Shown piece after piece: positions 6,099-61,047 of a DNA stretch of 64,000 bases. A program made the position numbers and the translations under genes. Location of the stretch: positions 124,001 to 188,000 of the forward strand of contig NIVC01000251.1 in the NCBI GenBank assembly GCA_002269645.1, written 5' to 3'. The stretch is from Macrostomum lignano. Its lineage: Eukaryota. Positions within the stretch are counted from its first letter, which is position 1. The number at the start of each line of letters is the position of its first letter. Under the pieces are notes generated by a model that ran no database searches, was not told where the DNA came from, and saw only the letters and a list, made by a program, of their open reading frames with translations.

Positions 6099-6138
6099 AT
6101 TGTCGATCAGTTGCTACCTTTTATTCGTGAAAACTTCT

Positions 6139-7296: not shown

Positions 7297-7330
7297 TGTA
7301 ATATACTACACGTTTCGAGTGTATGTGTGT

Positions 7331-8404: not shown

Positions 8405-8535
8405 CTAGATTCGATGCACAGCATGAGTAATTACACTTGAACTCCACAGACGGTTTGTCTGAGCAAAGCTTTGAAGTTACAGCTGCGGCACCCATGATCC
8501 AAAAACAGATTATAAATCATGAAAATGATTTCTAT

Positions 8536-9210: not shown

Positions 9211-9544
9211 ACAGGCTTGATATTAGCGGTGCAGCAACAGATGCAAGGATGGGTAGAAAACCACCGACTTGAGGATTCGAGAGAAGCATATTCTTCTTCC
9301 TATTTATAGACAATTTTGTGTCTGCCAATTCACGCAACGATCTTCTGTATCGCTTTAATCGCAGATACTGTTTCGGAGAAAGATCGATATTTCCCCGGAG
9401 CACGTTGTGACTCAATTCACAGAGACAATGAATCAGTTCCTTGCCTGCACCTCGAATAATGGCCCGCCGAAGAGTGGGACGGGCTTTGGCGAGCTCTGCG
9501 AGCTCGCCGCGACAAGAACATAGTCTGGAGATTCCGTTTGTCAT
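9188..9544 (-). CDS. Small basic protein ending in QVGG^FLPIL amphipathic peptide (putative protease-matured virion protein)
   Basis: CELSHNVLRGNI..KRYRRSLRELA..QVGGFLPILASVAAPLISSLFGG. The start at MTNGIS is assumed; the ORF track extends to 9634. Confidence 0.6.
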   Translation of the reverse strand: MTNGISRLCSCRGELAELAKARPTLRRAIIRGAGKELIHCLCELSHNVLRGNIDLSPKQYLRLKRYRRSLRELADTKLSINRKKNMLLSNPQVGGFLPILASVAAPLISSLFGGLLGR

Positions 9545-9681
9545 TTTGTTTAGCAAAGATGTTGTTGCAGTGCACCGCAATTTATGCACAATATATTTAT
9601 AGACAATTTCATAGCAGCTTGTACGTACATACAAATTCGGTACAGTGGTAAAACAGTAAAGTTACGCAACAGCTACATGGA

Positions 9682-10160
9682 TTAGACATGCAAAACGCTA
9701 GTCACATGATCGTACATTTGACAGAGCTCTTTAAAGTTTCGTATTCCAAGGAAAACAAGGCGGCCATTCTTTCCGCATAATAAACATTTAGCATTGCGAA
9801 ATGGAGACTTTATTACTATTCCATTGAAAACTTCACACTCCCACTTCACCCAGCGGGACCCGGAGTATGCAATTTGGAAAAAGTTTGGCCATCTGTCTAC
9901 TTCAGCGCGGTAAGTACTAGTGGTAACAACAACAGAAATTGGTTTACATTGAGGAAAAAGACGCAAAACTTGGTTGATGAGCGACAACCGAATACAATTG
10001 CAGACAAAGAACGCTGAAAAAAGTTGATTGTACATTTTCCTATTCGCAAATTGATAAGAGCTCTTGGTCTGCGAAATGTCCGTGCGCTCGCCCAGTCCAA
10101 GTCAGGCATGCGGCTCCATTTCGCGCAAAACACTCGGTTCACACACTCGACGTTCTGCAA
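9682..10160 (-). pseudogene. Divergent TATA-binding-protein (TBP)-fold gene, frameshifted near 9980
   Basis: Repeat 1: [14 protein letters not shown] and ALINLRIGKCTINFF..AIVFGCRS align with TBP NIVSTVNLGCKLDL and AAVIMRI..TTALIF..MVCTGAKS. Repeat 2: [43 protein letters not shown] aligns with [43 protein letters not shown]. No in-frame ATG at the 5' end. Confidence 0.65.
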
Positions 10161-10179
10161 GTAGATTTTTCGGCAGTTT

Positions 10180-10890
10180 TTACTTTCGTATCCTTCTTGG
10201 GGCTTTCGACCGCTTCTTTGATTCGTTGGCTGCTACTAGTTTCGATTGATGCTGTCGCTTTCTGGCCTGATTTTTAGGCACCTTTGGCTGCTTCTCCTTG
10301 ACAAGCTTTGGTGGTTTCTTTGCTTTCTTGCTTACTTTCTTGGCGCCTACCTTGATTTTTGGAGGTGGCGTCCAATAGCAACGATCGAATGCCTGTTTGG
10401 CTTCTTCGACAAACTGTAGCTGTTGAATTTTTGGCATTGCGGTCAAAACAGCGTCTCGAATCACGGCCGTGTCGAGAGTAAACAGAATCCTGTAGTAGCC
10501 GCTCTTGTTTTTGTAATCCTCTACAGGCAGTCCGTTTTGGTCGTACATTTTAAAGTCGTGAGCCAGCCCAAACGCTGCACTGTCACCTCCAAACGCTGGG
10601 TTGTAGCCCAGCAGAGCTAGACTTTCGCTGGAAAGGTGCTCCGCCACAGTGTTGAAAGTGTAGGGTATGCAGCTCTCAATGTGTTTTTGTGCAATGATGA
10701 TGAATTCGCGACCTTCGTTGTCAGTACGCACGCCCTTGACGATCAAAACAGGGACCGCATTGGCCAAGTAGAGAGGTCCCTGTTCGTCATATTCAATGTC
10801 AAACGTTTCAACCCCGTTGAAGCTCGGACCTCGCGGTTTGAGTGCCAGCAGCTCTCGCTTGACGCAGTTGAAGTCTTGCACTGTCTCCAT
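10180..10890 (-). CDS. Hypothetical protein; beta-rich core plus lysine-rich tail (possible ssDNA-binding protein)
   Basis: Intact 236-aa ORF with a TATATAAG box ~65 nt upstream. Function is inferred only. Confidence 0.55.
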   Translation of the reverse strand: METVQDFNCVKRELLALKPRGPSFNGVETFDIEYDEQGPLYLANAVPVLIVKGVRTDNEGREFIIIAQKHIESCIPYTFNTVAEHLSSESLALLGYNPAFGGDSAAFGLAHDFKMYDQNGLPVEDYKNKSGYYRILFTLDTAVIRDAVLTAMPKIQQLQFVEEAKQAFDRCYWTPPPKIKVGAKKVSKKAKKPPKLVKEKQPKVPKNQARKRQHQSKLVAANESKKRSKAPRRIRK

Positions 10891-14529: not shown

Positions 14530-15657
<1,128 letters not shown>

Positions 15658-42350: not shown

Positions 42351-44046
42351 TCATTTGTCGCACAAAGCTAATAAACGCTTCTGTTCATTTACCTGTGCTA
42401 CAATACCGCCTGTAGAAAATAGGCGCTGAAATCTAACGAAATCGCAACAGGTAACAAACAGATAAGACAAGGCACGAACTCTACTCACGGCAGTGTAGTA
42501 CAGACCTGCTGGCGGCGACTTGCGACTCTTGCCCAGCTGTACAAACGCCTTGTCAATTGTTAGGCCTTGCGACTTGTGAATAGTGATTGCCCAGGCTAGC
42601 CTCAGAGGAAACTGCTGTCTCGACAAGCTGGCTCCTCGCTGAAGCCACTGGCTTGACACTGGTAGAATTGGCACAACAGAAACTGATGGTGCACACTCGC
42701 TGCTACTACTACTACTGCCATCTTCTCTGGGCAGCCGCGTGGCTTGCATTGCCGGGCCATTGTAGCGCTCGAATTCAACCCAAACGCAGTCGGGCAAATC
42801 GTTTGGCGGCTTCTTTCCATTCGCATAGCAGATGCCACGAACCGTTCCAACTGAGCCATTCGCCAAACCATTTTGCACAGATAGATTCCGAGTCAACATC
42901 ACGCGGGCTCCAATCGCCAGAAATAGTCGCCTTGCTAGACCTGTCTCTGTTTTCTGCTTGCTATTATTAGCATTGTTGCCAGTCAGCGGTTGCCTTCCAG
43001 TACAAGTTGCATTGATTATCCGCACCGGATTGTTATCATCGACAATTTTTCGCAGCTCCTCACAGTTTGCACTAGACACATCTTCATTTGTGTGGTACAA
43101 TAGCGTGCATTTGCCATCAACATCTAGCGGTAGCATGTCTGCAGCTGCTACTTGACACTTGTCCATTACAGTCTTCCAAATGGCCTCGGTTACTTTGCCT
43201 TCGCGAAGAGACTCTAGAATGCTGGCAAACTCTGTGTCATTTGCTTGACGCACCTGCTTGTTTATATAAACGACCGTTTTGAAACTCTGGTACACTTGAT
43301 AGCCAATCGTTGTCAAATTATCTTTAGCATTCTTGTTAAACACATACAGCTGTTTGTCTTGCACTGGTGGCAGCTGAAACACATCGCCAACCAAAATGAT
43401 TGACCGTCCGCCGAAATATACTTCTTCAAGCGTGTCCCGCTTCTCCTCAGGAAACAGTTCGCACAGACGATTGTGCACCTTGGCCAGTGTCCTTTGGCCA
43501 ACCATGCTAAACTCGTCAATGATTATGTAACGCACATTTGACCATAACGATTGCATGTCTGATAATGCCTTGCTGCTGCCCGAAGTCGTTGAAACCGTCA
43601 GCATTAGTAGTACAGGCCGTAGTCGAAAACTTTACGTTCAACTTCAAAGCTGAATGCAGTGTCTCGCCAGCAATGTTGAACGCAGCCACACCAGTCGGTG
43701 CCAATACTTTGCACTTGTCCTCGTCAATCAATTTTCGTAGTGCAGCAATCAGAAAACTCTTGCCAGTTCCAGCGCTGCCATACAAAATTACTCGCAGTGG
43801 TGGAGGCATCTTTCCCGACTCAGTAGTATTGTTAGTAGTCTCACTTTCGGCCAGCCGTTCAAGTTTCAATTGATTGTCAATCATGTTGTAGAGCTTCCGC
43901 TGTCTCTCATTAAGCAGTGAAACGTCAATGGTTTGACGATTAGCCCCTGCACCATCTTCGATGGTAATTCCAGCTACACGTCTAACAGGCTTAGTCAGTT
44001 CGGTCATTAAAACTGCTTTGCCTCTGCCAGACTCGGAAATCGCCAA
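42351..44046 (-). pseudogene. PIF1-family SF1 helicase domain
   Basis: GSAGTGKS, APTGVAA, IIIDEFSMVG, GDVFQLPPV, QFPLRLAWAITIHKSQGLT, YTAVSRV. Confidence 0.95.
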
Positions 44047-44165
44047 TCTGAAGCAGCACTACAATCGAAACCTTCTGGCGCAACTGGCAGAGTATCTTCC
44101 GGATTCTTGTTCACATTCAGCTGAAAGTCCGCATGCCTTGCACCCAGTGCTGCCATCCAATCCTC

Positions 44166-47100
44166 TTACTGACGCTCCGGATAAGCTGGACCAGCAACTG
44201 ATTCGGCATTTGCGGCAGTCATGTCTGGCAAATCGGCGACTGCTTCGCGTTCCTCTTCGTCAGCTTCATCGTTGCGCAGGTCGTCCAAATCGCGCACAAC
44301 CAGCTGACACGCTTCCGTTTGCATCATCGCCTCGTAGGCCTCGCGCCAGCTTGAATGTGATCCCTTTGCTTGCTCTTCGGTTCGCCAACAGCTCCACAGT
44401 AGAACCTGCTGCCAATAGTATTGTTCGCGCCGTTTATCACCGCTTTCTGTTGAACGCAAAAACGGACTCATAATCAAAATGGCTTCCTTGCCCGCTAGTC
44501 GCTTCTTGTAGACGGCAACTTGTTCACCACCGCGTCTTTGTTGACGCATCGGGGGAATATAGTCCGAAAAGAATCGATACATTGTCTCATTCTCCAATTG
44601 TGCCGGCCGACTCGCGTACTTTTCAATGCTATTCTTGCAAACGCCTCGACTCTCAATCGCTCTAGCCTCGCCAGTTTGAACGTAGACAAACTCTCGCGAC
44701 GCCTTGTACATAGGTCTCTGTAATACCAGATGCATAGCCTCTTGTGCTGAATAGTCGCGCGCTCCAACTTGCATCATCAAGTGCTGCTGAACAATGCGAC
44801 GTGCAGTATTTGTTCGGCTATACTCGTCATGCTGCTGCTGATTATTATCATTTTCTGCTGCATTACCAATGTCCACTGGCTCCGGCTGCTGCTGCTGCTG
44901 CTGCTGCTGTTCCATCGAAAAATAGCGACGATTCAACTCTTGCAACTGCTCCGATTCCTTCTCTTTTTTGCTTGCATACTTGATCAAATAGCGAATCAAA
45001 TCTTTGGCCGAAGAAATCATCTGAATGTCTACGTTAGCTCTCCACATGCACAGTACTTGAGGATTGTACATGCCAATATATTGGTCGTTGCGCTGCGTCT
45101 CAACCTTCCAGTTTAAACTCGACAGCTTTTTGGCGACTGTCTTTTTCTGCGTATCTCGCGGATATTTGTATCGACACTTCATAGAGCCGTTCTTTTCCTT
45201 TCGTAGGCACCGATTACTGCTCCATGAGTGCCTCATGTTGTTGTGAAGAAGTGCTTGCAAATCAGCTTTATCGTCCTTAATTTCGGACGGCTTCAATCGA
45301 GCCGGCTGCGCTCCTACTCCGCCGGACGAAATTTCGCGACCGCTATCTGATTCGTCCATGCACGTGTTCCAACTGCAAATGTACTTGTCCACAAAGGCAA
45401 CCAAATCTTCTGCTTGCAAGGATTTCGAAGTCACATCCACTCCATCCGGCATCCAAACGCAGGCATGAACATGCGGGCTTTCTCGACTCTGATACTCGAT
45501 ACGAAACCAAAAGTCCTTTACTTTCCAGTGCTCAACAAAAAATCTTTGCAAAAACAATTCAAAACGAATCCAAAACACAGTATCCGCCATCCCAGGATCA
45601 TTTTGCAGTCTGGAACGCAACTCGTCTCGGATTTCTTGCCAATTATCGTTGTCAACGTCTTCTTCGATTTGCCAAGCTTGCAACAACTCTGGCCACTGAA
45701 TATCCGCCGCGGATAACGTCACAAAATAATGCGGCAAACCAATTGTTTTAATCATTGCTTCCAATTGTCTACGCTTGTTTTGCCAATAGCTGGCTGTTCC
45801 ACGCAACTCTGATGCTCTGGCTGACACGCTGGACATCACCGCTGGGTCTTTTAGCTTCTCAAGCATCTCTGGCGCACTTAAGCCAGCCAAATTCTTGTCG
45901 TGCACAAACACTCGTCCAACCTCCAATGCTCTCCATCGCATCACCATTTTCTCAATGAAAAAGCGAAAGCGAGGATCGCAACGAAATCTCGAGCAGTGAA
46001 ACTGCATCAGGTGCTTTGCATAGTCGCCCAGGCTTATCGAACGAACTCGCGGGGTCTTGTAGTCGCCTCTGCCGTCAGGAAATAGGTGAGGATAGGCCAG
46101 ACTAAACAAGTCCTCCTGTTCGAGATCATTCACCAGTACTCGGCTCGATCTTGGCCATTGCAATTTCTCTTTTAGCAAACGATCGCGAATCTTTACTTCC
46201 AAACGACGCAATGGCGTATTCAGCAAAGCGCTTGTCGTCTCTTCCAACTGAGCTTCTTCCATTTGTTGCCTTTGCTCATCTTCATCTGGCTGCCTGGCTT
46301 CCTCTTCAGCCGCATCCAGATCAACATTGACATCTTGAGTGTCCATTTGATTAACCATTTCATTGATTTGCTGCGCATATCCATTCTCTGGCAACGAATT
46401 CAACGCTTCGCGATCAATACCGACAGAAAATCGTTGAAAATATAGATTATTATTAATCAGATACCTGATGGCATTCAACACCTTGTCGCGTCTTATTCGC
46501 AGATTGTTCATCGCTCCCGTAACTGTAGTGCCAAGATTGTTTTGCATCTTTTTGTCATACATCAGCACCACAGGTAGAGTTCGTCTGGGCAATTCTCTCA
46601 CAACGCTTGCCTGATCCTGCGGAAACATTATTCCATGCCCTCTCGAAGCATGCTGGCCTTGCGGAAACAACCGATAAAACTACAATAACAGACAATATCG
46701 GCGAAATCAGCATTTGCTCTGCAACTGACAAATCGTGTAGTTATTCAGGCTGCTCACACATTGGATTGGCATTATTTTCGTCACTAAACAGCTTGGGTTT
46801 CGAATTATCTTTGACACATCGTTGGCATGATGCATCACTTTGCTGTCGAAAATAAACGAACGGAAACCTTTCCTTGCACACCAAGCATCGATTTAAATTA
46901 CTCAGCCTTAAAGTACAATCTTGAAAAAATTCATTCCGCATCTTCTTGTACTGTTTAGTAAATGGATTGCGAAGACAATGCGGCAAACTTATATCACCAG
47001 CATATTGCTCTTCAGCATCAGGATTATTTTCTTCATGGTCAACTTGCTCGATTTCCGACTCTTCGACCTCAATTTCAACTCGTTGCTGCTGCTGTTGCTC

Positions 47101-47571
47101 AGTGTGCGCCTTTTTCCTAGGCGAAGAACGACTCTCCTCAACGGTGTTCACTATAGTGCGCCTGCGCTTTGTTGGCGATGCTTCTAAAACAATATCTGTA
47201 GGTATGGACTGCTCATTACTGGCCTCTTTTCTTGGTGAACTTCGACTCTCGCTTTGAACATTTTGTCCTTGTCTTTGTCGAGTCTTGCTCTTTGTCGGTC
47301 GCTGATGATCATTGCTCTCTTCTAGAACTACTCTTGTCAACTCGACTTCATCCTCCCGTGCAATGCAGCTGATTTTGTCAGACTCTGCAGCCGTTCCAAT
47401 GCTGCTTAAATTCGATGTACCAACTGAAGAAGCCTCGTCACCTTCTTCCATACGCCTTTTCTTAGCTAGTAATCGCTCGCTTCGACGCGTTGGACTGCCA
47501 GGCTTGACAACTCGCTTTCGGCGACGAACTACACTTGAAGCGCAACTGTCAGATGCTTCTGCTGACGACAA
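44166..47571 (-). pseudogene. HUH Rep domain with N-terminal Cys-rich region
   Basis: CLVCKERFP..CQRC..PKLFSDENN, AYPHLFPDG, TLSAADIQWPEL, EYQSRESPHVH (HUH), YLIKYASK (catalytic Tyr motif). Confidence 0.9.
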
Positions 47572-50559: not shown

Positions 50560-51282
50560 CTACGGGTCCCGCTTAGCACGTTGTGGGGTGCGCATGTACA
50601 AGCATTCGAATCTGTCAGCAGCCGCGTGGGTATCGACTCGAAAGCGCGCCACGCTGCGAAAATTTACTGAGCCGTCCTCTTCCAGCTGGCGGCGGTAACC
50701 GGCGCCGAACAACGACTCGCAGCGGCCAGCGGGCAGAACGCCCCCGATCGACGTTGACGCGGACCCAGTTCCGTTGCGTCCCTTCAAGGCGAGCCCTTCT
50801 GCCTGACAGGCCTTGCGAATGTCGTCGATGCTCGTGTCTGGCATTCGCTGGCGCGGTGTAAAAGCAATGGCCACCGACACGGCCGTCGCCATCGTGTCCA
50901 ACAACTCGGGCATCGGAATTGCGCCTTTCTGACCAGCAAGCCGCACGTGCCGGATCTTCGCACGAAGCGTATCTACCGACGGGTTCCGGCTCCAGTCTTT
51001 TCTAATGTAGCGCTTCAGGGCCGAAAAGACCTGTGGCCGCGTCAGCGTCGGCGATGTCTCGAGTTCGCGTTCGGCGCGGCGCAGGGCACGTCGTTGCTCA
51101 TAGTGCCGTTGGGCCCGCTCTCGCCACCTCTCAGCTCGCGATGGCTTCGCCGTCGCCTCCGACATGTCAAGGTCGTCGACGGCGGCGCACACATCGAGCA
51201 CGTCCTCCTCCGGGACCGCGGCAGCGCCGTCGGAAATTTCGCCATCTTCTCGCTCAGCCATTTCAGCTGCAACATGTAACAT
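50560..51282 (-). CDS. Orphan 240-aa ORF in a GC-rich island
   Basis: Long open frame, GC-rich within AT-rich flanks, preceded by an acceptor-like CTTACAG; no recognised domain. Confidence 0.45.
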   Translation of the reverse strand: MLHVAAEMAEREDGEISDGAAAVPEEDVLDVCAAVDDLDMSEATAKPSRAERWRERAQRHYEQRRALRRAERELETSPTLTRPQVFSALKRYIRKDWSRNPSVDTLRAKIRHVRLAGQKGAIPMPELLDTMATAVSVAIAFTPRQRMPDTSIDDIRKACQAEGLALKGRNGTGSASTSIGGVLPAGRCESLFGAGYRRQLEEDGSVNFRSVARFRVDTHAAADRFECLYMRTPQRAKRDP

Positions 51283-52009: not shown

Positions 52010-52530
52010 CGCAAGTCGTAACGTTAGCAAGGACTAGGGCAAGATCTTCCCTCACAATAACATTGCTAGCATGTTTATTAATATCAGGGATGCACAGCCC
52101 GAGGTCTAGAACATTCTTGAGTATGTTCCCACTACGGTAGCTGACCCTGGTGCAATCACCATATTCGTTGAGAGTCCAGCCATTTAAATAGCTGTTTGCC
52201 TGGGTAGTTATACTGGGTGTCACCTAGGGCAAGGTGGTTGCAGTTAAAGTCTCCTATGAAGATAGTAGAGGGTCTAGAAAATATGCGGTCTAGAAGTTCA
52301 ATGTCTAGTCTAGTTGGAGTCGGGGCCCTGTAGAAGAGAACCACGTTGAGTTGTTTAGGGTTTTTGTTTTTAAGATGCAGTTCAAAACAAATGATTTCAT
52401 GGTTGCAGTTGTCAAAATATTTTTCAACATTCATAATTTCCATATGATTTTTGTAGAGAACTGCTAGTCCTCTTCTGCAGCTGGGGACATCAAACCGGAG
52501 CGTGGCATACTCAGGTATTTTTTTTCCTCT
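52010..52530 (-). pseudogene. APE endonuclease fragment of a related LINE
   Basis: RFDVPSCRRGLAV..FYRAP..IGDFNCNH..NYPGKQL..NVLDLG, clearly paralogous to 56755-57363. Confidence 0.8.
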
Positions 52531-54504
52531 AGGCAAGTTTCAGAGAAATTTTGAGACATTTTGATAACTAACTTTAAGTAAATTTTAGACTTAAATTTTT
52601 TTTAATATTTGTATGCAATTATTGCTTTCAAGAAAACACATGCTTTTATGATATTGTTATAAGACTTAAAAATCTGAAACAAATTCAAGAGAGCTGTAGG
52701 ATAAAATCAGGCAACAGTAGAGAGGGCAAGCAACTGAAATCAGAGAGGTTAGTATAAGTTTCCTAGTTGGCCGCAAACTAAGAACCTTACATATGATTAA
52801 TAGTAACTCAAACGAGGTAGAATATGCTTGGATGTTATTTACCGATCAACCATATAATTATATTTACTACGGCATTTTCAATGTTTGTATAAATAAGTAA
52901 ATAAGCAAATAAGCGAGCTACAAGCAGGAAGAATAAGTCTGAGACACTACGGTATAACTAAGCTACTCAAATACTCCTATTAATCTATTATATAAATTAT
53001 ATAAATATAATATATATATAATATATAATATATAATATATATATTTTTATTTATTTATTTATAAATATATAAATATAAATTATCTATATATAAATTACGC
53101 CTATCTACCTGGTCTGAGACCGATACGCTACTATTCATAAATCTATAGTCATGGCAGTGCTCAGTCTTACCCTCCGGTCACAGGTGTCTGCAAAAGCGGT
53201 CGTAGTGATTTACAAACTATTAAGCAATCCAAAAGTTAATACAAGTGGAATGGGCGTGTAACCTCGTGGCTAAGCTACTGGTTTTCTATTTGCTACTAAG
53301 GATTTTAAGTGGATTTACTGGTTGAGATTTGGTAGTTCGCTGCCACCAGGTTCCTGCTGTTCCCTAATTCTAGCGTTAGTTTAAAGAACTGAGTCAGGAC
53401 ACCGATAAGTTAGTTACCACAAAAGTTTAATAAGGAAGTAATTTACGGTACAAAAGTTGGTCTTGTTTTTACATAAATTCCCTATTTCCTTATTCCCGCT
53501 ATAGTGCTTTGGGCAAGACTCCCAGTTATAGATTTAGAGGCAAGACTCCTCTGTGCAAGCCTAAATTATATTTCTTTTTTTTTCTCCTTCTTACCGCTTC
53601 CTTGTAAATTTTTCAAGTTCGAGGACAGGAGAAGACACTCCAACATTTTGCTTTCCCAAGATTCATTTTTTCATTTTATATGTTCGAGCGCTTCAGCCCT
53701 ATTCCAGGGCTCTTACGCTAATATGTATTTTTATAATTTCACGATTGGTATTGGTGTAAATTCGATTTTGGTTAAAACAAATAGATAATGAATCTTAAAA
53801 AGCAATTTTACAGTTAACAATAAAACAAATAATGGATACAAGTATTCTATAAATCAACTTAAGCAATTAAAACAGATATTTTGGGTGTCTAATAAGGGAT
53901 ATATAAAAAAGAGTCAAGAGTCAATTAAAAAAGTGTAAAAAAGTTAATATTGGAATATTTAAATATTTAAGTATTTACATAAAATTCACAAAGTATCACA
54001 AAGGTATTTAGGTCTGTTTGGACTTGTCTTTTTACTAAATTTGCAAATTATCTGCGGATAATTCAAAGAGGGACAACCATGTTCTAAAAATACTACCGCA
54101 ATGAAAAGTGCAGACCCTACGAAAACGAAGTTTTCGCAACGGGAGTACCAGATTTTTGAAACTATAAATACCGTTCCTGATCCTACAGGAGCAAGCACAG
54201 CTTACTCAGTCTAAGTTAAGGGCCTTATGGTCCATCTGGTTTGGGGTTCCAGATTTAAAACGTCCCCCAGCCTGAGTGAGCTGCAGTACAGACTAAATGA
54301 ACTAAACTGAGTGCGGACAAAGCAGCCTTGTGTCCCTAAGGGGAATAAGCTCGGGCCGCCGTTCCGTCATACGGCAAAAATTTTTTGGCAAACTGTCCAA
54401 ACAGACTTGAGTTAAGAATAAATTTTAAACTTTTGCATTTGACCGCATTATTTCAACCGTGAGAGGATCTCACCCAGGAACGGCTCGAGGTGAGTTTTTA
54501 AATT

Positions 54505-57363
54505 TTATTGATTAATGGCTTTCCTAAATTTAGTAGTGACTGGTTCTTTAAACCTTGGTCTGCTCCAAACTTTTTTATCAGAGTGAAAGTCATGCACTTC
54601 TGTAAGCAGAACTTTTTTGTACCACCTAAGGCCTAGGTTCCATATCCTATCCCTAAGTCTAGGCATCTTGGTTGTTTCATGAAGGTAACTAATTTTTGTG
54701 TATCTAGGGGCACCAAGCACAATTCTCAGTGCCTGATTTTGAAGCCGCTGAAGTTTCTGCATGAGGGCATCAGAGGTGTTGATCAGGATTGGAGCACCAT
54801 AGGTCATACCGCTTTCAATGTAGGACCTATAAAGAAGTCGCAGAGCAAGTTGGGAGATTCTCGTATTGCGAGCTAGCCTTCGTAAAGCTTCGAGTCTGGC
54901 GATGGAGATGCCAGCAGCCTTCGAGATGTGATGACTATAGTTGAGATCCTTGTCAAGAACGATGCCAAGGAAAGTGACAGAATCGTGATAAGGAATCAAT
55001 TCTTGACCAAGTTTAAGCGGAGGTTTGGCGGGGCCAGTGGAGAAGTTACTCTTGTACCTGAAGAAGGCCATCGCCTTGCTTTTGGTGGGATTAATGGAGA
55101 TGCCAATGTCGTCGAGCCATTTTTTAAGTGCAACAAGATAGCTGTTCAACTTCTTAGCCGCAATCGCAGACGTTCTGGCGCTCGCCCAAACGGCCAGGTC
55201 GTCTGCAAACTGGCTTTTCTTTACCTTGATGTCACGCGATATAGGGATCGTACTGACGTAGATGATGAATAGCAGCGGTGAGAGGACTCCACCCTGAGGA
55301 ACGCCTGCAGCGGGCTTGAAACCTTCGCTGATCGCCCCTCCAGCCTGGATGGCGATTTCCCTATCTTCTAGGTAGCTGGACAAGGTCCTAATCATGTTGT
55401 GTGGCAGGTCACTCTCCAGGAGATGATACCTAAGATAGCTGTGCCAAACTCCGTCGAAGGCACCTTTGACGTCAAAGAAGACACCAAGTGACACATGTCT
55501 CCATTGCTTCATTTTTAGTATATCGTCTGTGAGTCGCACAATGTTGTCAAACGTACAGTGATCTTGTCTGTACGCACATTGGTCCTCATTAATAATACCC
55601 TTGTTTTCTAGGATAATTCTAAGATTCCTAGCAATAATCTTTTCGTAAAGCTTACCCAAGCAAGAGGTTAAGCTAATTGGTCTATAGTTGTTGATTTCAT
55701 TTCTAGATTTTTTTAGGTTTAGGGATCATTTTGATAGTTGCCCGCTTCCAGGCCTTGGGAAAATAGCCCAGAAGAAAGCTCGTATTGAAGATTTTTGCGA
55801 TGGATCTAACAGAGTCCGGACTGAGCCCTCGTTTGAGGACGATATTTGGGATCTGGTCAGGGCCGGGGGCTCCCCCAGATCTGAGATTTTTTGTTTCCGT
55901 GAGGACATCAATATCTAGTATGTTGAGGATGTCAGATTCTATATCTTCCTTATCAGGATCATCAGGGTCAGCCCTGTCCCTGTGGTAGGTCAGAGCTCTG
56001 ACCATGCAGTCATGGGGCCGGAAATTCTCATGATTTTCCTTTAAGACAACCTTTTTATAGAGTAGGGAATTGGTGTCCGGGTGAGGCTGCATTTGGTCCT
56101 CAAGAAAGTCTTGAAACAGGTTTGCAGTTTCTTGCTCAGTTTCAGCAGTCTTCCCTTTGTAGCTAAGGGTAGGGAAAGAGACTGGTTTGATGGATTGTCC
56201 GGTCATTTTTTTGACATCAATCCAGAATTGACGCGGTTCCTTCCTATAGCTAGTTTTAGCAATTTTCTGACACAAGTTTTCAAATTTTCTATATCTATGC
56301 ATTCTAATAGCATTTCTAATTTCTTTAGCAGCTTGGTTTGCCTGTACTCTAAAAGCGTCAATTCTGGTTTTTTTGAAAAGTTTTCGAAGCTTTCTTCTGT
56401 TCTTGATTTTTTCAACGATGTCTGGAGGAAGCTGTTCTCTCGGGTCTCTGTTTGGGACCACCTCTTCAATTGTTTCATGTATTTTTTCCGTGAGCTTGTC
56501 AACCGCGTTGTCTAGATCTTCGGGAGTAGAGATTCGGGAACGAATCATACTACAATTTTCTAGCTTATCTTGTAGAGCATACTTAAATGCCTCCCAGTCC
56601 GTATGCCAAAAACTCTTGCGAGGCCTGGGTTTAATTTTAGAGCTGGGGTCGATAAAGATCCTAATGATTATAGGGAGGTGGTCACTGTCGAGGTCATCGC
56701 CCACAAGGACGTCACTGACAGAGTTAATAAAGTCAGGAGAGCATATGCCTAGATCTAGGACATTACCAACCGTGTTGCCCCCTCTATTATAAATTCGGGT
56801 GCAGTCACCAAAGGTGTTAATAATATAGGGGGGGGGGGGTTAGGGTGATTGTCGAGCCAGTCATATAGCTGTTTGCCCGGGTAGTTATCTACACTATCAC
56901 CGCCTAGCATAGCGTGTCTACAGTTGAGATCTCCAATGATAAGGGATCTGGGTTGGGAGAGCAGCTGCTCAAGCAGAGTAACGCTAATGTTGTCAGGATT
57001 GGGGGCTCTGTAAAGAAGGGAGATCCTAAAAGTGCTGCAAGGATTATTATTAGGAGTTACATCGAGGCTGACAAGCTCATGGTGAGAATTGTCATAATAT
57101 TTATGAACATTTGAGATTTTTAGGGTATTTTTGTAGGCAATAGCCAGTCCCCTTCTACAGTCAGGAGTGTCAAACCTGATAATGGCATATCCTTGTACGT
57201 AAAACTTATCATTGTTTTTAAGATCAGTTTCTGAGAATAGACCAATGTCAATATCAACACTGTGCAACCACATTATAATCTCATGCATTTTATTGCTAAG
57301 CTTGTTACAGTTCAGGTGTCCTATATTTAGAGTGCTATTAGGAGAATTGATATCGAAAGCCAT
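54505..57363 (-). pseudogene. LINE ORF2 (APE endonuclease + reverse transcriptase), two frameshifts in homopolymers
   Basis: IGHLNCN, SETDL, GDLNCRH, SDHLP, PGPDQIPN, YRPISLTS, FFDVKGAFD, GVPQGGVLSP, QFADD. The shifts fall in G12 (56828-56839) and T7 (55708-55714). Confidence 0.93.
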
Positions 57364-57385
57364 TACGATGAAATATATTTCTTCT

Positions 57386-57931
57386 TCAGGGCTCAGATCT
57401 GCCTCCGCTCACCGAAGTGGCTTTGGCTTCACCTGCCCTGACAGCAGGCACTCTTCCCGGATTCATGAAGGTCGTCAGGACTTCCGTCACTACCCGAATA
57501 GCAAGCTGGCTTGCTTCCCAGGCAGTGAGCAGACGTCCCGGCTCGATCTCCATGATCCGGTTGAGTGCCCCGAGAACTACCTCGAGCACGTCCCCTTGAG
57601 TGAAGCCCCTCTCACCGTTTCCAGCAGAAGAGGTGGCGGCAATGTCGGTGTTGGTTAAATCAGCCTTGTTTGAAATCATTGCAGGCATCTTGGTCTTGGT
57701 GGCTACCTCGTCAAGCGGCGCTGTTGATTGGGCGGCAGCGGCAGCGGCAGCAGTGATTGGCAGTGCTGGTTGGACTGGAGCGGCAGCAACAGCTGTAGGC
57801 GGCATTGCTGATTGGACAGTTGCAGCAGCGGCAGCAGCATCGGACGCTTTGGAGGCTTTATTCCTGTACGCAATTGGCCCTAATGTTGGCACCTGATTTA
57901 CAGCCTCCGCATAAGTTACAGGGCCAGGCAT
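57386..57931 (-). CDS. ORF1 C-terminal segment (in frame beyond a single TAA)
   Basis: Same frame as 58016-60250, with 28 open codons between the stop and MPGPVTYAEAV. A SYAxA-like motif typically follows ORF1 knuckles. Confidence 0.6.
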   Translation of the reverse strand: MPGPVTYAEAVNQVPTLGPIAYRNKASKASDAAAAAATVQSAMPPTAVAAAPVQPALPITAAAAAAAQSTAPLDEVATKTKMPAMISNKADLTNTDIAATSSAGNGERGFTQGDVLEVVLGALNRIMEIEPGRLLTAWEASQLAIRVVTEVLTTFMNPGRVPAVRAGEAKATSVSGGRSEP

Positions 57932-58015
57932 GCCAAAAGTCTCTACTAATGATTGGGTAGGTTCTAAATATCTAGACTGAGCTAATTTAAGTTTTAATGT
58001 TTGTACCCTGTGGTG

Positions 58016-60250
58016 TTAATTTTCGGTTGCCCTTTCATTAGCATGTTGTACCACTTGACATTTGAATGAGTAGGCCGGGTGTTCACCACCACAGTTTGCA
58101 CACCTGAAGCCAGTGTCTTTTGGGCAATCACCGGAAAAGTGCGCCCCGGCACATTTATTGCAGACGAAGCCGGCGTTGCACCTGCTCTCGGAGTGACCGA
58201 GCCCTTGGCACCTCTGGTACTGGATTTCCTTGACCGGTGGAAGGTTGTGCGATTCTTCGCACCGGAATTTTAATGCCCCCAGCCTAATGCCATTTTCCAG
58301 GCATGTATCGTATGTAGCTCTAGATTTTGTAAACATGCGAATTAAATGTGTTGGTTGTCCTGAGGCTTTGGAGATGATACGTGTTGCTCCGTCGAATTGT
58401 AGGTGTGCTTGATTTTCGTCTAAGTATTCGAGAAGTTCCTCAGCTTCTACGGCTAGAGGAACGCCTTTGAGGATAAACGAGCGCACCTGCGGCGACTTTA
58501 GAGGCTTTCGCAGCCGATCGTCACCTTGGTGCCGTGGCCTGTCTGACGGCAGACGCCTGGTGACCGTGTGCCCGTTAATTTCATTAGTTTTTAATGTAGC
58601 TGTTAATAAATTATTCATATCACTAGGTGAGTTTGTAAATACAAGGTACCCAGAGCTATGGTACAGCTCTTTAACAGACATGATGCGAATGTTCGGAAAA
58701 TTATTTTTTAGAAAGCTTTCAAATTTGATTGGATTTTTTGCCTCAACAGGCATTTCAAAAATAACAGGCGAGATTTTCGTTAGTTTGTTAGACTGCTGAT
58801 AGCGTGCGCTTGATTGCTGAGCCTGGGCAGATTGCTGGCTAGCCTGATCTGGTTGCTGTGTGTGGGTGCCTGATTGCTGTGAGTGAGTGCTTGATTGCTG
58901 TGATTGAGTGTTTGCTTGCTGGTTAGTAGCTTGCGGCAAACTGTAGCTATTAGGCTTTTGTGTGTGAGTGTCAGACGATTGATGCTTTGGCTTAGTGCTT
59001 GGCTGCTGAGTGGCTGAGTGTGCTTGCTGAGTGTTTGAGTGTTGCTGAGTGTCGTTAGTTTGCTTGTTGCTAGACAGAGTGGCTGGTTGCTGAGGCTTGG
59101 CTGAGTCAGATTGTTGAGTGCTCTGCTTGTTGTTTTCTTGAGCATCAAGTTTAGTAATTTGAGTAGCTTGTTGGTTGGTAGTTGGTTGTGAACGCCGATT
59201 GGCTTCGTTTGACTTAGTTTCTGGCTTTTGTCTAGTTTGGCTGTTAGATCTGGCCCTAATTTTGTTAATATTCTCTGCATCCTGCCTGGCTCTGCGACGA
59301 ACAGAGTCTTCGTCGTCCAGGTCGCAACTAATCGCGCAGTCAATCGGCTGAACGCAAGGATTAGAGCCTAAAGCAGGAGCAGGATCGAGCCTACGATCAG
59401 AAGTAAGGCGGAAAGTTAAGTTGACCCGGAGGTCTTTGACTTTGGCGTCTCTGAGGATACCATGTTGAAGGTGCTTCTGAGTAGCTCCACTCATTACAAG
59501 AAGAGAGCCACTGGCCAGTTTCTGCGAAAAGACCACATTGGAAGACGTGGACTTAGTTCGAAGCTGAAAGTCCCGTTCAGCACCGAAGGAGAGAGAAGTG
59601 ATAGTCGGATTGGGACCTAGTTCTGGTTCATCATCACTATGCCAAGGAATATTCACAGTCCCGTCCTTGTAGAAATTGACAAGACATGAGTTGAATAATG
59701 GCATGTTAAACTCTGCGCTAAGCCAGGTGACCAGCCTGTTGATCAGCGGATGCCAGTCATCATTGGCTTCAATCTTAGTGTTACCATAGCTGTAATCTGG
59801 GCCAAACCACACTATTTTCCTAGATTCTGGCCGGCCGTTAGTTAGATGGTGGAAAGCTTTTGGTTCTAATTCTTTTGTTAGTATTCGGAGAATTTCTCTT
59901 TCAGAGTTCTTGAGAGCATTTGGAAAATAGCTAACATTACAGTTGTTCGGTAATTTTGCAATTGTGTTATTGCCTTTGTCAGTTTGCAGTGAAAATGTTA
60001 GAGTTTGGATGTCGCTAGTGGAACTAGTGTCTAATTTGCCCCTAACAGGTGGTCCGCTACTCTCACCGTTGGAGCTTGAAATTGCTTGAGGAGGTGTCTC
60101 AGGAAGAGGAGCACTAGACGGCGACGCCGAATGCTGAACTGGTTGGCGACCTGGTCCCGAAGACACACGATTGTTGGCCTTCTTACTGGCCGTGATTGGT
60201 GGTGAGTCTGTCTCTCGTGCGGATCGTTTGATACTACTTTCAACCTCCAT
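58016..60250 (-). CDS. LINE ORF1: ALKBH2/3-like 2OG-Fe(II) dioxygenase + Q/S/T linker + RRM-like region + 3 CCHC knuckles
   Basis: FNSCLVNFYKDG, WHSDDE (HxD), SLSFGAER, GSLLVM, QHGI (H), RVNLTFR (RxxxxxR); knuckles QRCQGLGHSESRC, CNKCAGAHFSGDC, CANCGGEHPAYSFKC. Confidence 0.92.
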   Translation of the reverse strand: MEVESSIKRSARETDSPPITASKKANNRVSSGPGRQPVQHSASPSSAPLPETPPQAISSSNGESSGPPVRGKLDTSSTSDIQTLTFSLQTDKGNNTIAKLPNNCNVSYFPNALKNSEREILRILTKELEPKAFHHLTNGRPESRKIVWFGPDYSYGNTKIEANDDWHPLINRLVTWLSAEFNMPLFNSCLVNFYKDGTVNIPWHSDDEPELGPNPTITSLSFGAERDFQLRTKSTSSNVVFSQKLASGSLLVMSGATQKHLQHGILRDAKVKDLRVNLTFRLTSDRRLDPAPALGSNPCVQPIDCAISCDLDDEDSVRRRARQDAENINKIRARSNSQTRQKPETKSNEANRRSQPTTNQQATQITKLDAQENNKQSTQQSDSAKPQQPATLSSNKQTNDTQQHSNTQQAHSATQQPSTKPKHQSSDTHTQKPNSYSLPQATNQQANTQSQQSSTHSQQSGTHTQQPDQASQQSAQAQQSSARYQQSNKLTKISPVIFEMPVEAKNPIKFESFLKNNFPNIRIMSVKELYHSSGYLVFTNSPSDMNNLLTATLKTNEINGHTVTRRLPSDRPRHQGDDRLRKPLKSPQVRSFILKGVPLAVEAEELLEYLDENQAHLQFDGATRIISKASGQPTHLIRMFTKSRATYDTCLENGIRLGALKFRCEESHNLPPVKEIQYQRCQGLGHSESRCNAGFVCNKCAGAHFSGDCPKDTGFRCANCGGEHPAYSFKCQVVQHANERATEN

Positions 60251-60609
60251 AAGCCTAGCAACTATAATTTAAATCTTAAAACAATTTAAGCCTTAAAACA
60301 GTAGGCTAATAAAACTTTTTATAAAACTGATTAAAACTATAAACAATATAAGCGACTATACCTACTAGTAGTAGTAGTTTGTAAGTAAAGTACAAGAGAA
60401 GGCCTTAATTATCTACTAACACTAAATTCTATATAGACGAAAAGCCTGGCGCCGAGTTGCAGACGTCGCGCGCGGTTGCAGGTGCCTGGCGCCGCTGCTG
60501 CCGCACACCGCTGAAGTCGCTAGACCGCGCCGCTGCCGCCGCACCGCCGATGCCGTCGACCAGCCGAGACCGAGGTCGCCGAGGCCACAGCCGCCAAGCC
60601 GCAGACGAA

Positions 60610-60680
60610 GCCGAAGTCGCCGAAGCAGCCGGAGTCGTCGAAGCAGCCGGAGTCGTCGAAGCAGCCGAAGTCGTCGCAGA
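60610..60680. repeat. 18-bp tandem repeat in the GC-rich LINE leader
   Basis: GCCG(A/G)AGTCG(C/T)CGAAGCA x~4. Confidence 0.85.
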
Positions 60681-61047
60681 GAGCCAATGCAGTCGCCAGG
60701 TGAGTCGTCACCACAGATGCTAAAGCCCTCTATAGCCAGAAACCACCCGTAGGCCTACACTGTAGATACCTGTAGTGGTTCAAAAACTATAGAGTTTATT
60801 AGTTACCATGGCAACGACGGCTTTCCCAAGAGCCCAACTGCTCTGTAGTTCTAAAGGAACCCCGATTTTAGCTACTTACCCCCGCTCTAATTATTTCCCC
60901 GGGTTGAAACTACTGATAGTAGGGTAAAAGCATATTTGGACCCACAAAATTTCCCGTTCCTAAAATAATGCCCTACTACACAAGGCGTGTAAAAAGAGAG
61001 TGAAAAGAGAGTGAGAAAAGTAAAGTTTTAGACATTTAACCCCTCGC

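What the first reader, a model, noticed from the sequence alone, without database searches (positions are those of the whole stretch)
58016..60250. LINE ORF1p fused to a catalytically complete ALKBH2/3-type demethylase
Seen: all Fe/2OG ligands (HxD, distal H, RxxxxxR) are intact, N-terminal to a long Q/S/T linker and the nucleic-acid chaperone knuckles, in one 744-aa frame. Established: ALKBH2/3 and AlkB remove m1A/m3C from DNA and RNA; plant RNA viruses carry AlkB domains that repair RNA; m1A and m3C block reverse transcriptase; ORF1p coats its own RNA in many copies. Inference: the RNP carries its own eraser to clear RT-blocking or silencing methyl marks from its RNA or cDNA, a retrotransposon counter-defence or self-repair module. 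I cannot verify how widely such fusions have been reported.
Basis: partly seen in the sequence, partly recalled or inferred. Interest (0 to 1): 0.8.

Follow-up and report, generated by a model that had tools for sequence, protein, structure and literature searches.

The report
Flatworm LINE whose ORF1 carries AlkB
A jumping gene (LINE) of the flatworm Macrostomum has an ALKBH2/3-type nucleic-acid demethylase built into its RNA-coating protein; the domain is kept under strong selection across several element lineages, so the element probably cleans methyl lesions off its own RNA or cDNA, though this particular copy is dead.

Summary
Window 60250..58016 (-) is a 744-aa ORF with an AlkB domain (Pfam PF13532, E=1.7e-29). 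NxY, HxD, the distal His and RxxxxxR are all intact. A Q/S/T-rich linker, an RRM-like region and CCHC knuckles follow.

It is ORF1 of a ~6.8-kb LINE (about 60821..53990, -) of Macrostomum lignano or a close relative. This copy is dead:
- a GAA->TAA nonsense mutation removes ~210 C-terminal residues of ORF1;
- the first knuckle has Cys->Tyr;
- ORF2 has +5 and +1 frameshifts.

An intact sister element exists in the M. lignano assembly (ORF1 938 aa, ORF2 950 aa). At least three diverged AlkB-ORF1 lineages occur in M. lignano, and more occur in unidentified sequencing runs. dN/dS on AlkB is ~0.05-0.11, the lowest of any ORF1 segment. Related LINEs have plain ORF1s without AlkB.

AlkB domains also sit in esterase-type LINE ORF1s and in the upstream ORF of a Penelope-like element. 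By sequence and fold the domain is ALKBH2/3-type. It is not ALKBH5-type and not a recent copy of the host ALKBH3 gene. Its origin is unresolved.

Demethylation of the element's own RNA or cDNA is a plausible inference but is untested. The literature I could search holds no report of AlkB in LINEs or Penelope-like elements.

The parts
53990..60821 (-). Whole LINE copy, ~6.8 kb: 5'UTR, ORF1, ORF2, 3'UTR. No poly(A) tail. The ends are approximate.
   Evidence: Aligns with L001 7461..14194, an intact element in M. lignano NIVC01001213.1.
60251..60821 (-). 5'UTR. Contains an 18-bp tandem repeat at 60609..60676. The stretch 60817..60624 is 95% identical to L001.
58016..60250 (-). ORF1 as it reads in the window (744 aa), ending at the premature TAA.
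59390..59974 (-). AlkB (Fe(II)/2OG dioxygenase) domain, aa 93-287, of ALKBH2/3 type.
   Evidence: Pfam E=1.7e-29. PDB ALKBH3 and ALKBH2 by sequence. AF2 model pLDDT 89.8. Foldseek TM 0.78-0.86 to ALKBH3/ALKBH2. Domain envelope.
59669..59677 (-). N192-F-Y194, the 2-oxoglutarate-binding NxY motif.
59633..59641 (-). H204-S-D206, the iron-binding HxD. D207 and E208 follow, giving HSDDE as in ALKBH3.
59462..59464 (-). H263, the distal iron-binding histidine.
59408..59428 (-). R275-VNLTF-R281, the RxxxxxR 2-oxoglutarate-binding motif. Identical to human ALKBH3 and ALKBH2.
58769..59263 (-). Q/S/T-rich low-complexity linker, aa ~330-494. Includes 21- and 18-nt tandem repeats at 58849..58921 and 59024..59064.
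58220..58768 (-). RRM-like region of ORF1, aa 495-677: two beta-alpha-beta-beta-alpha(-beta) units. Part of it is related to the PRE_C2HC region of other LINE ORF1s.
   Evidence: Low-confidence model. Foldseek is not significant, but the weak top hits are RRMs. The family profile matches the PRE_C2HC region of P0158.
58058..58219 (-). Three CCHC zinc knuckles, aa 678-731. The first is broken in this copy (Tyr678, TAC, where paralogs have Cys, TGC).
58016..58018 (-). Premature stop TAA (GAA, Glu, in the intact paralog L001).
57386..58015 (-). Remainder of the native ORF1, in the same frame: an Ala-rich stretch plus a conserved helical C-terminal segment, then the natural TGA at 57388..57386. 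Cut off in this copy.
54505..57363 (-). ORF2 (APE endonuclease ~57333..56666, reverse transcriptase ~55719..54958). Broken by a +5-bp insertion near 56839 and a +1-bp insertion near 55714. Otherwise 93-98% identical in amino acids to the intact L001 ORF2.
53990..54504 (-). 3'UTR. It ends ...CCTTTGTGAT without poly(A). The CTTTGTGA motif is duplicated at the window copy's end.

Best explanation
This is a non-LTR retrotransposon (LINE) of Macrostomum. Its ORF1 protein is an ordinary RRM-like + CCHC-knuckle RNA-binding/chaperone protein that has gained, at its N-terminus, an ALKBH2/3-type Fe(II)/2-oxoglutarate dioxygenase joined by a disordered Q/S/T linker. These points are shown: (1) the architecture; (2) the intact catalytic set; (3) the ALKBH2/3 fold; (4) an intact sister element, plus several diverged lineages that keep the fusion; (5) strong purifying selection on AlkB; (6) related LINEs that lack AlkB; (7) this window copy is dead. 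The following is inferred. ORF1p binds the element's own transcript in many copies, so the tethered dioxygenase is concentrated on LINE RNA, and on the single-stranded cDNA or target DNA during target-primed reverse transcription. There it oxidatively removes N1-methyladenine/N3-methylcytosine-type lesions or marks. Those bases disrupt Watson-Crick pairing and stall reverse transcriptase, so removing them would raise the yield of full-length cDNA. It would be a self-repair or counter-restriction module, analogous to the AlkB domains of RNA-virus replicases.
For: Domain identity rests on Pfam E=1.7e-29, the family profile against PDB (ALKBH3 120 bits, ALKBH2 95 bits, no other AlkB family at E<0.1), an AF2 model with pLDDT 89.8, and Foldseek (ALKBH3/ALKBH2 E~1e-16, TM 0.78-0.86, against ALKBH6 2.5e-10, E. 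coli AlkB 1e-9, ALKBH5 3.5e-8). N192, Y194, H204, D206, D207, E208, H263, R275 and R281 are invariant across five family members.

LINE context: the intact L001 element has ORF1 of 938 aa and ORF2 of 950 aa with Exo_endo_phos and RVT_1. L012 has ORF1 of 843 aa and ORF2 of 948 aa. L002 and L014 also have an ORF2 immediately downstream.

Selection: for window vs L001 the AlkB core has dN 0.17-0.18, dS ~2.8-3.5 and omega ~0.05-0.06, and all six indels in the ~68%-identical AlkB region are multiples of 3. For P0004 vs P0149, AlkB omega is 0.11, against 0.19 for RRM, 0.20 for CCHC and 0.40 for the C-terminus. In the deep comparison with P0004, AlkB is the best conserved part of ORF1 (55%, against 34% for RRM).

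AlkB as an addition: the AlkB-less relatives L015 and L016 have CCHC ORF1s of 443 and 421 aa, ORF2s 28-33% identical to the Macrostomum family, and no AlkB in any frame.

Recurrence: AlkB occurs in esterase-type LINE ORF1s (P0006, P0007 and relatives) and in a Penelope-like element, all with HxD, H and RxxxxxR present.

Established knowledge: AlkB, ALKBH2 and ALKBH3 remove m1A and m3C from DNA and RNA, and viral AlkB domains repair RNA (PMC2553587). AlkB treatment is used to relieve RT blocks in tRNA sequencing (PMC7968990, PMC12140624).
Against: There are no biochemical data: activity, substrate (RNA or DNA; m1A/m3C, m6A or other) and any effect on retrotransposition are all untested. The copy in the window cannot itself be functional. 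Synonymous sites are saturated in both dN/dS pairs, so omega is approximate. ALKBH2-type and ALKBH3-type substrate preference cannot be told apart from sequence or model. Nothing here shows that m1A or m3C occurs on LINE RNA in flatworms. I looked for no expression or proteomic evidence. The RRM fold of the C-terminal half is only weakly supported (pLDDT 55).
Confidence: 0.6

Rival explanations
1. The domain is an m6A eraser. It removes N6-methyladenosine from the element's RNA to escape m6A-dependent decay or silencing, or to tune translation, as proposed for the orchid Ty3/Gypsy ALKBH5-like protein.
For: There is a retrotransposon-encoded AlkB with in vitro m6A demethylase activity (PMC9289625). 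m6A affects L1 and ERV fate in mammals (PMC7873242). Tethering to ORF1p would put the enzyme on the transcript.
Against: The fold and sequence are ALKBH2/3-type, not ALKBH5/FTO-type: Foldseek gives ALKBH3/2 at 1e-16 and ALKBH5 at 3.5e-8, and the PDB sequence searches return only ALKBH3, ALKBH2 and weakly E. coli AlkB. The HSDDE motif is shared with ALKBH2/3.
Confidence: 0.15
2. The domain acts on DNA, not RNA. It would repair or demethylate single-stranded cDNA or nicked target DNA during target-primed reverse transcription, or erase a DNA mark (such as 1mA, 3mC or 6mA) at insertion sites.
For: ALKBH2 and ALKBH3 are DNA repair enzymes, and ALKBH3 prefers single-stranded DNA (PDB 8jnk and 8jnr are ssDNA complexes). 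The model is as close to dsDNA-bound ALKBH2 as to ALKBH3. CCHC-knuckle ORF1ps bind single-stranded nucleic acids in general (established knowledge).
Against: Nothing discriminates this from the RNA reading, and it may be complementary rather than exclusive. The sequence score favours ALKBH3 over the dsDNA-specialised ALKBH2 (120 vs 95 bits).
Confidence: 0.15
3. The domain acts in trans on host RNAs, for example by demethylating tRNAs or mRNAs to alter translation, stress granules or a host restriction pathway. Alternatively it has a non-catalytic role such as RNA binding or scaffolding.
For: ALKBH3 also acts on tRNA and mRNA (established knowledge; PMC8254245). The orchid paper raises trans action on cellular RNA.
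Against: Invariance of every metal and 2OG ligand in all lineages, with omega of 0.05-0.11, argues for catalysis. Covalent fusion to ORF1p, which binds in cis, favours action on the element's own RNP.
Confidence: 0.07
4. It is an artefact or passenger: a LINE inserted into, or read through from, a host ALKBH gene, or a one-off exon capture with no role in the element.
For: LINEs can transduce or fuse with host sequence. This copy is degenerate.
Against: The same single-ORF architecture with ORF2 downstream recurs in an intact M. lignano element, in at least three diverged M. lignano lineages and in other assemblies. It is under purifying selection. The host's own ALKBH3 ortholog is a separate 263-aa gene only 39% identical to the LINE domain.
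Confidence: 0.02

Closest known systems
AlkB domains in replicase polyproteins of RNA viruses (Alpha-/Betaflexiviridae, Closteroviridae; also picorna-like 'Riboviria' polyproteins)
   Same: An AlkB dioxygenase is embedded in a protein encoded by an RNA-based replicon, and it is thought to repair methyl damage (m1A, m3C) on the replicon's own RNA (PMC2553587). The folds are detectably similar (BFVD hits at E 1e-9 to 1e-12 to Grapevine virus T, GLRaV-3, Picornavirales polyproteins and others).
   Different: Here the host replicon is a nuclear retrotransposon of an animal. The domain is fused to the RNA-coating ORF1p rather than to a replicase. The template is copied by a reverse transcriptase. 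The closest structural matches are cellular ALKBH3/2 (E 1e-16), not the RNA-virus domains.
Orchid (Phalaenopsis) Ty3/Gypsy paALKBH5-like ORF (PMC9289625)
   Same: It is a retrotransposon-encoded AlkB-family dioxygenase retained over rounds of replication, with a proposed role in countering RNA methylation of the element.
   Different: That case is an LTR element of a plant, with a separate extra ORF, an ALKBH5 clade member, and demonstrated m6A demethylase activity. Here it is a non-LTR element of an animal, with an in-frame N-terminal fusion to ORF1p, an ALKBH2/3-type fold, and untested activity.
Human ALKBH3 (and ALKBH2)
   Same: Same double-stranded beta-helix fold (TM 0.78-0.86). Identical HSDDE and RVNLTFR motifs and the NxY motif. 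32-35% identity over ~190-205 aligned columns.
   Different: These are stand-alone host repair genes. The flatworm has its own ALKBH3 ortholog (P0159, 175 bits to human ALKBH3). The LINE domain scores only 91 bits to human ALKBH3, is 39% identical to P0159 and lies outside the animal ALKBH3 clade in a poorly resolved tree.
LINE ORF1 proteins with accessory enzyme or reader domains (esterase and PHD in CR1/L2-like elements; type I RRM+CCHC ORF1p)
   Same: ORF1 is modular, built from RRM, CCHC, coiled-coil, PHD and esterase units that are shuffled among lineages (PMC4120745, PMC3905857). The C-terminal half here is a type-I-like RRM+CCHC ORF1p, and module exchange is seen here too.
   Different: The survey of 448 Jockey-superfamily ORF1s (PMC4120745) does not mention AlkB, oxygenase or 2OG anywhere in its text. 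Here AlkB is added to a type-I-like ORF1. In other animals it is inserted between the coiled coil and the esterase of esterase-type ORF1s.

Membership tests
AlkB family, ALKBH2/3 subgroup of Fe(II)/2-oxoglutarate dioxygenases | Double-stranded beta-helix (jelly-roll) core with the N-terminal extension typical of AlkB proteins | tested here: met
   AF2 model pLDDT 89.8, pTM 0.85. Foldseek top 25 hits are all ALKBH3 or ALKBH2, TM 0.72-0.87.
AlkB family, ALKBH2/3 subgroup of Fe(II)/2-oxoglutarate dioxygenases | HxD...H iron-binding triad | tested here: met
   H204, D206 and H263 are invariant in the family alignment.
AlkB family, ALKBH2/3 subgroup of Fe(II)/2-oxoglutarate dioxygenases | 2-oxoglutarate ligands: NxY and RxxxxxR | tested here: met
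   N192/Y194 and R275/R281 are invariant. The RVNLTFR motif is identical to ALKBH2/3.
AlkB family, ALKBH2/3 subgroup of Fe(II)/2-oxoglutarate dioxygenases | Closer to ALKBH2/3 than to other AlkB subfamilies (EcAlkB, ALKBH1, 5, 6, FTO) | tested here: met
   Family profile against PDB: ALKBH3 120 bits, ALKBH2 95 bits, others at E of 0.1 or worse. Foldseek gap of 6-8 orders of magnitude. Assignment to ALKBH2 versus ALKBH3 is not resolved.
AlkB family, ALKBH2/3 subgroup of Fe(II)/2-oxoglutarate dioxygenases | Oxidative demethylation of m1A/m3C in nucleic acid | not testable with these tools
   Needs an enzyme assay.
Non-LTR retrotransposon (LINE) with APE endonuclease | ORF2 with an apurinic-type endonuclease followed by a reverse transcriptase, downstream of ORF1 on the same strand | tested here: met
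   The intact L001 ORF2 has Exo_endo_phos (E=5.9e-8), Exo_endo_phos_2 (1.6e-10) and RVT_1 (3e-34). The window ORF2 is 93-98% identical to it in three frame-shifted pieces.
Non-LTR retrotransposon (LINE) with APE endonuclease | Multiple dispersed copies, including 5'-truncated or degenerate ones | tested here: met
   Evidence includes the window copy, L001, several M. lignano protein predictions (P0002, P0003, P0008, P0140, P0153, P0295) and a related ORF2 fragment at window 52041..52509. No genome-wide count was possible.
Non-LTR retrotransposon (LINE) with APE endonuclease | Target-site duplication and a defined 3' tail | tested here: inconclusive
   The shared sequence ends at ...CCTTTGTGAT with no poly(A). 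No clear TSD was seen, and the exact ends are uncertain.
Type I ORF1p (RRM immediately upstream of CCHC knuckles; Khazina and Weichenrieder classification as summarised in PMC4120745) | CCHC zinc knuckle(s) | tested here: met
   The family has three knuckles; two are intact in the window and the first carries Cys->Tyr. Pfam zf-CCHC is detected in relatives P0152 and P0154.
Type I ORF1p (RRM immediately upstream of CCHC knuckles; Khazina and Weichenrieder classification as summarised in PMC4120745) | RRM fold upstream of the knuckles | tested here: inconclusive
   The model has pLDDT 55 with two beta-alpha-beta-beta-alpha(-beta) units. Foldseek E is above 0.5, although most of the weak top hits are RRMs. 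There is no Pfam RRM hit.
Retroelement ALKBH5-like m6A demethylase (orchid Gypsy type) | AlkB domain nested within the ALKBH5 / plant ALKBH9B-10B clade | tested here: not met
   ALKBH5 is only a distant structural hit (3.5e-8, TM 0.59) and gives no sequence hit in PDB searches.

The most novel reading that the evidence does not exclude
ALKBH2/3-type demethylases have been recruited repeatedly by unrelated animal retroelements. One case is an RRM/CCHC-ORF1 LINE lineage in Macrostomum. A second is an esterase-type (CR1/L2-like) LINE lineage in marine animals. A third is a Penelope-like element. This would mirror RNA viruses and a plant LTR element. It would imply that m1A/m3C-type base methylation of retroelement RNA or cDNA, whether chemical damage or a deliberate host mark, is a general and so far unrecognised barrier to reverse transcription that mobile elements pay to remove.
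Probability: 0.35. Interest if true: 0.85.

Novelty: new variant of a known kind. Interest (0 to 1): 0.68.

Why it matters
AlkB domains are known in RNA-virus replicases and in one plant LTR retrotransposon. I found no report of them in non-LTR retrotransposons or Penelope-like elements, and a survey of 448 Jockey-superfamily ORF1s does not mention them.

An ALKBH2/3-type enzyme fused to the protein that coats LINE RNA, kept under stronger constraint than the RNA-binding domains themselves, argues that base methylation of the template matters for reverse transcription in vivo. That turns an open question into something testable: do m1A/m3C-type lesions or marks limit retrotransposition? M. lignano has transgenesis (PMC5730564), so catalytic mutants of an intact element can be tested.

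The family also supplies naturally RNA-tethered demethylases. Such enzymes could be useful as tools, because AlkB treatment is already used to relieve RT blocks in tRNA sequencing.

Tried and rejected
- The first full-length homology search was swamped by the low-complexity linker and gave only 7 hits. I repeated it with the AlkB domain alone and with a family profile.
- The structure of the C-terminal half came out at low confidence (pLDDT 55), and its Foldseek search was not significant. The RRM assignment is therefore left inconclusive.
- The NJ phylogeny of AlkB domains supports only two groups, the esterase-type clade and the M. lignano A/B clade (both 100%). Deeper nodes have 14-28% support, so single versus multiple capture and a bacterial versus animal origin cannot be decided.
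- I rejected a recent capture of the host ALKBH3. The host ortholog P0159 is 39% identical to the LINE domain and far closer to human ALKBH3 (175 vs 91 bits).
- I rejected programmed read-through of the TAA, because all paralogs have a sense codon there.
- I rejected a chimera of a host gene and a LINE insertion (see rival explanations).
- An Rfam scan of the window found nothing.
- I could not define target-site duplications.
- The organisms behind the Logan runs (SRR316283xx-4xx, SRR19193851) and the ENA assemblies could not be identified with the tools at hand.
- Seven literature searches for AlkB or dioxygenase domains in LINE, ORF1, non-LTR or Macrostomum TEs returned only the orchid Gypsy paper and the virus work. 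One further query was rejected for syntax. Subscription journals and Repbase were not searchable.
Full report
OBSERVATION. The minus-strand ORF 60250..58016 (744 aa) exists as described. Residues 141-281 match Pfam 2OG-FeII_Oxy_2 (PF13532) at E=1.7e-29, 103.9 bits against a curated cut-off of 31.2. The best solved relatives by sequence are human ALKBH3 (E=6e-25) and ALKBH2 (E~3e-17). The catalytic set is complete: N192-x-Y194, H204-x-D206 (in the context WHSDDE, identical to ALKBH3), H263 and R275-VNLTF-R281. A Q/S/T-rich linker follows (aa ~330-494), then a ~180-aa region, then Cys/His knuckles at aa 678-731.

WHAT THE LOCUS IS. Homology searches place the sequence in the flatworm Macrostomum lignano or a very close relative. 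Locus L001 (NCBI GCA_002269645.1, NIVC01001213.1) carries an intact sister element. Its ORF1 is 938 aa with the same AlkB-linker-RRM-like-CCHC order. ORF2 follows 25 nt later and is 950 aa, with Exo_endo_phos/Exo_endo_phos_2 and RVT_1. The window aligns with it from about 60821 to 53990 on the minus strand, a ~6.8-kb LINE with no poly(A) tail.

THE WINDOW COPY IS DEFECTIVE.
- The ORF1 stop at 58018..58016 is TAA where L001 has GAA. The frame then continues for another 209 codons through an Ala-rich stretch and a conserved helical segment to the natural TGA at 57388..57386. The native ORF1p is therefore ~940-955 aa, and the 744-aa product is truncated.
- The first of the three knuckles reads Tyr678 (TAC) where paralogs have Cys (TGC).
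- ORF2 has a +5-bp insertion near 56839 and a +1-bp insertion near 55714, which split it into three frames. It is otherwise 93-98% identical to the L001 ORF2.

IS THE FUSION A REAL, SELECTED FEATURE? Yes.
- M. lignano holds at least three diverged AlkB-ORF1 lineages: the window type, the P0001/P0002/P0140 type and the P0153/P0295/P0155 type.
- An exhaustive profile search found further proteins of the same architecture (P0004, P0149, P0151, P0152) in Logan assemblies of runs SRR316283xx-4xx. Each has an APE(+RT) ORF2 directly downstream. L012 is a complete element with ORF1 of 843 aa and ORF2 of 948 aa.
- Between the window and L001, the AlkB-coding part is only 55-70% identical in DNA, yet all six indels there are multiples of three. 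The AlkB core has dN 0.17-0.18 against saturated dS (~2.8-3.5), giving omega of ~0.05-0.06.
- In a second pair (P0004 vs P0149), AlkB has the lowest NG86 omega of all ORF1 segments: 0.11, against 0.19 for RRM-like, 0.20 for CCHC, 0.28 for the linker and 0.40 for the C-terminus.
- In the deep comparison of the window with P0004, AlkB is 55% identical while the RRM-like region is 34% and the knuckles 45%.
- All metal and 2OG ligands are invariant in the family alignment.

Saturation of dS makes the omega values approximate, but the direction is unambiguous.

AlkB IS AN ADDITION TO AN ORDINARY ORF1. The same profile search found ORF1 proteins of 360-443 aa with CCHC knuckles. They match the profile only from the start of the RRM-like region (P0154, P0160, P0161, P0170, P0240). 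Two of them sit in complete LINEs (L015, L016). Their ORF2s are 28-33% identical over their full length to the Macrostomum family, closer than the esterase-type ORF2s. Neither contig contains AlkB coding sequence in any frame. Part of the RRM-like region is related to the PRE_C2HC region of other LINE ORF1s. A structure model of the C-terminal half has low confidence (pLDDT 55). It shows two beta-alpha-beta-beta-alpha(-beta) units, and only non-significant Foldseek hits, mostly RRMs. The type-I (RRM+CCHC) assignment is therefore probable, not proven.

MODULE SHUFFLING. Window vs P0001 is 71% identical in AlkB but 96% in the RRM-like region. P0001 vs P0140 is 95% identical in AlkB but 59% in the RRM-like region. 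In DNA, identity to L001 jumps from ~68% to ~97% at about window 59130. Subfamilies carrying different AlkB modules have therefore recombined. This is the reticulate ORF1 evolution described for the Jockey superfamily (PMC4120745), and in every recombinant an AlkB module was kept.

WHAT KIND OF AlkB.
- An AlphaFold2 model of aa 81-300 is confident (pLDDT 89.8, pTM 0.85).
- Foldseek against the PDB puts human ALKBH3 and ALKBH2 on top (E~1e-16, TM 0.72-0.87). ALKBH6 (2.5e-10), E. coli AlkB (1e-9), ALKBH5 (3.5e-8) and ALKBH1 follow at a distance.
- The family profile scores 120 bits on ALKBH3 and 95 bits on ALKBH2. It is an ALKBH2/3-group enzyme, and these data cannot assign it to one of the two.
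- It is not a recent copy of the host gene. M. lignano has its own 263-aa ALKBH3 ortholog (P0159, 175 bits to human ALKBH3). The LINE domain is 39% identical to P0159 and scores 91 bits to human ALKBH3.
- Outside Macrostomum, the best-scoring relatives are ~200-aa bacterial AlkB proteins at 40-50% identity.
- A rough NJ tree places the retroelement domains outside the animal ALKBH3 clade, but with only 14-28% support at deep nodes. The origin is unresolved.

AlkB IN OTHER RETROELEMENTS (found while following homologs).
- P0006 and P0007 have a coiled coil (P0007 also a PHD-like zinc finger), then AlkB, then a GDSL-type esterase. This is the esterase-type ORF1 of CR1/L2-like LINEs (PMC3905857) with AlkB inserted. 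An ORF2 with APE and RT follows.
- P0007 is encoded identically on four marine-metagenome contigs, two of them from TARA. P0006 has 11 cluster members on long contigs of one assembly. Five more AlkB+esterase proteins were found.
- These ORF2s are ~23% identical to the Macrostomum ORF2 and 40% identical to each other, so they belong to a different LINE clade. Their AlkB domains form a separate clade with 100% support.
- In L011 a 1012-aa ORF with AlkB at aa 530-665 lies 108 nt upstream of a 710-aa ORF with an RT (YIDD) and a GIY-YIG nuclease. That is a Penelope-like element.
- HxD, the distal His and RxxxxxR are present in all of these.

MECHANISM (inferred). ORF1 proteins bind their own transcript in many copies, which is established for LINEs. 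A dioxygenase tethered by a flexible linker would therefore be concentrated on the element's RNA, and on single-stranded cDNA or target DNA during target-primed reverse transcription. AlkB, ALKBH2 and ALKBH3 remove m1A and m3C from DNA and RNA, and viral AlkB domains repair RNA (PMC2553587). These lesions block reverse transcriptases, which is why AlkB treatment is used in tRNA sequencing (PMC7968990, PMC12140624). The best-supported model is self-repair or counter-restriction: removal of m1A/m3C-type methyl groups from the template so that full-length cDNA can be made. I put the identity and selected status of the fusion at about 0.95, and this specific mechanism at about 0.5. The rivals are m6A erasure (disfavoured by the non-ALKBH5 fold), action on DNA (possibly complementary), trans or non-catalytic roles, and artefact (refuted).

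NOVELTY. The searchable literature contains AlkB in RNA-virus replicases (PMC2553587) and one ALKBH5-like ORF in orchid Ty3/Gypsy elements (PMC9289625). It contains nothing on AlkB in LINE ORF1 or Penelope-like elements. A survey of 448 Jockey-superfamily ORF1s does not mention it. The M. lignano proteins are in UniProt only as uncharacterised 'Fe2OG dioxygenase domain-containing protein' entries. Subscription journals and Repbase were not searchable, so prior mention cannot be excluded. I rate it a new variant of a known kind (replicon-encoded AlkB), of clear interest to transposon and RNA-modification biologists.

Noticed in passing
window ~59130 (boundary); ORF1 60250..57386: The ORF1 is a mosaic. 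The AlkB half is ~68% identical in DNA to L001 and the rest is ~97% identical. Among paralogs the AlkB and RRM/CCHC modules occur in different combinations, which points to recombination between subfamilies.
   Followed up: yes
L006 8001-12515; L007-L010 (e.g. L009 1061-6203): A different LINE clade, in marine metagenomes and an unidentified ENA assembly, has ORF1 = (PHD-like) + coiled coil + AlkB + GDSL esterase, followed by an APE+RT ORF2. Its AlkB domains form their own clade with 100% support.
   Followed up: partly
L011 1805-7083: A Penelope-like element (RT with YIDD plus GIY-YIG nuclease) is preceded by a 1012-aa ORF that contains an intact AlkB domain, 40% identical to the window's.
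   Followed up: partly
window 57389..58015 (-): The part of the native ORF1 cut off by the stop holds an Ala-rich stretch and a conserved helical segment (VLEVVLGALNRIMEIEPGRLLTAWEASQLAIRVVTEVL). It is shared by all family members, including P0004, P0149 and P0151, and matches no known domain.
   Followed up: no
window 42351..47571 (-): A Helitron: one 834-aa ORF has Helitron_like_N/Rep and a 417-aa ORF has a PIF1-type helicase. The coding region is split over several ORFs.
   Followed up: no
window 4374..10890 (-): A run of five ORFs of 224-396 aa on one strand, one of them with an integrase core domain (rve, 7331..8404). Probably an LTR retrotransposon or another integrase-bearing element.
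   Followed up: no
window 14530..15657: A (CTAT)n microsatellite of ~282 units at 95% match. It explains the low GC and the GC skew of -0.46 in that bin, and the spurious long ORFs there.
   Followed up: partly
window 52041..52509 (-): A fragment of a related but distinct LINE, 49-52% identical in amino acids to ORF2 aa 59-223 of L001. It lies ~1.5 kb beyond the 3' end of the AlkB element.
   Followed up: partly
window 60609..60676: An 18-bp tandem repeat (AGCCGAAGTCGTCGAAGC, 3.8 copies, 94% match) inside the element's 5'UTR.
   Followed up: no
P0159 / P0304 (M. lignano PAA75878.1, PAA53807.1): The host's own ALKBH3 ortholog (263 aa), clearly distinct from the LINE-borne domains. It is useful as a reference for any capture scenario.
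   Followed up: partly
P0212, P0271, P0291 (spiders Argiope, Nephila, Parasteatoda): Spider ALKBH3-like genes of 580-630 aa carry a ~300-aa C-terminal extension and scored as high as bacterial AlkBs against the family profile. I did not examine whether they relate to TEs.
   Followed up: no
window 50560..51282 (-): A 240-aa ATG-initiated ORF with no Pfam match, in a GC-richer stretch. Nature unknown.
   Followed up: no
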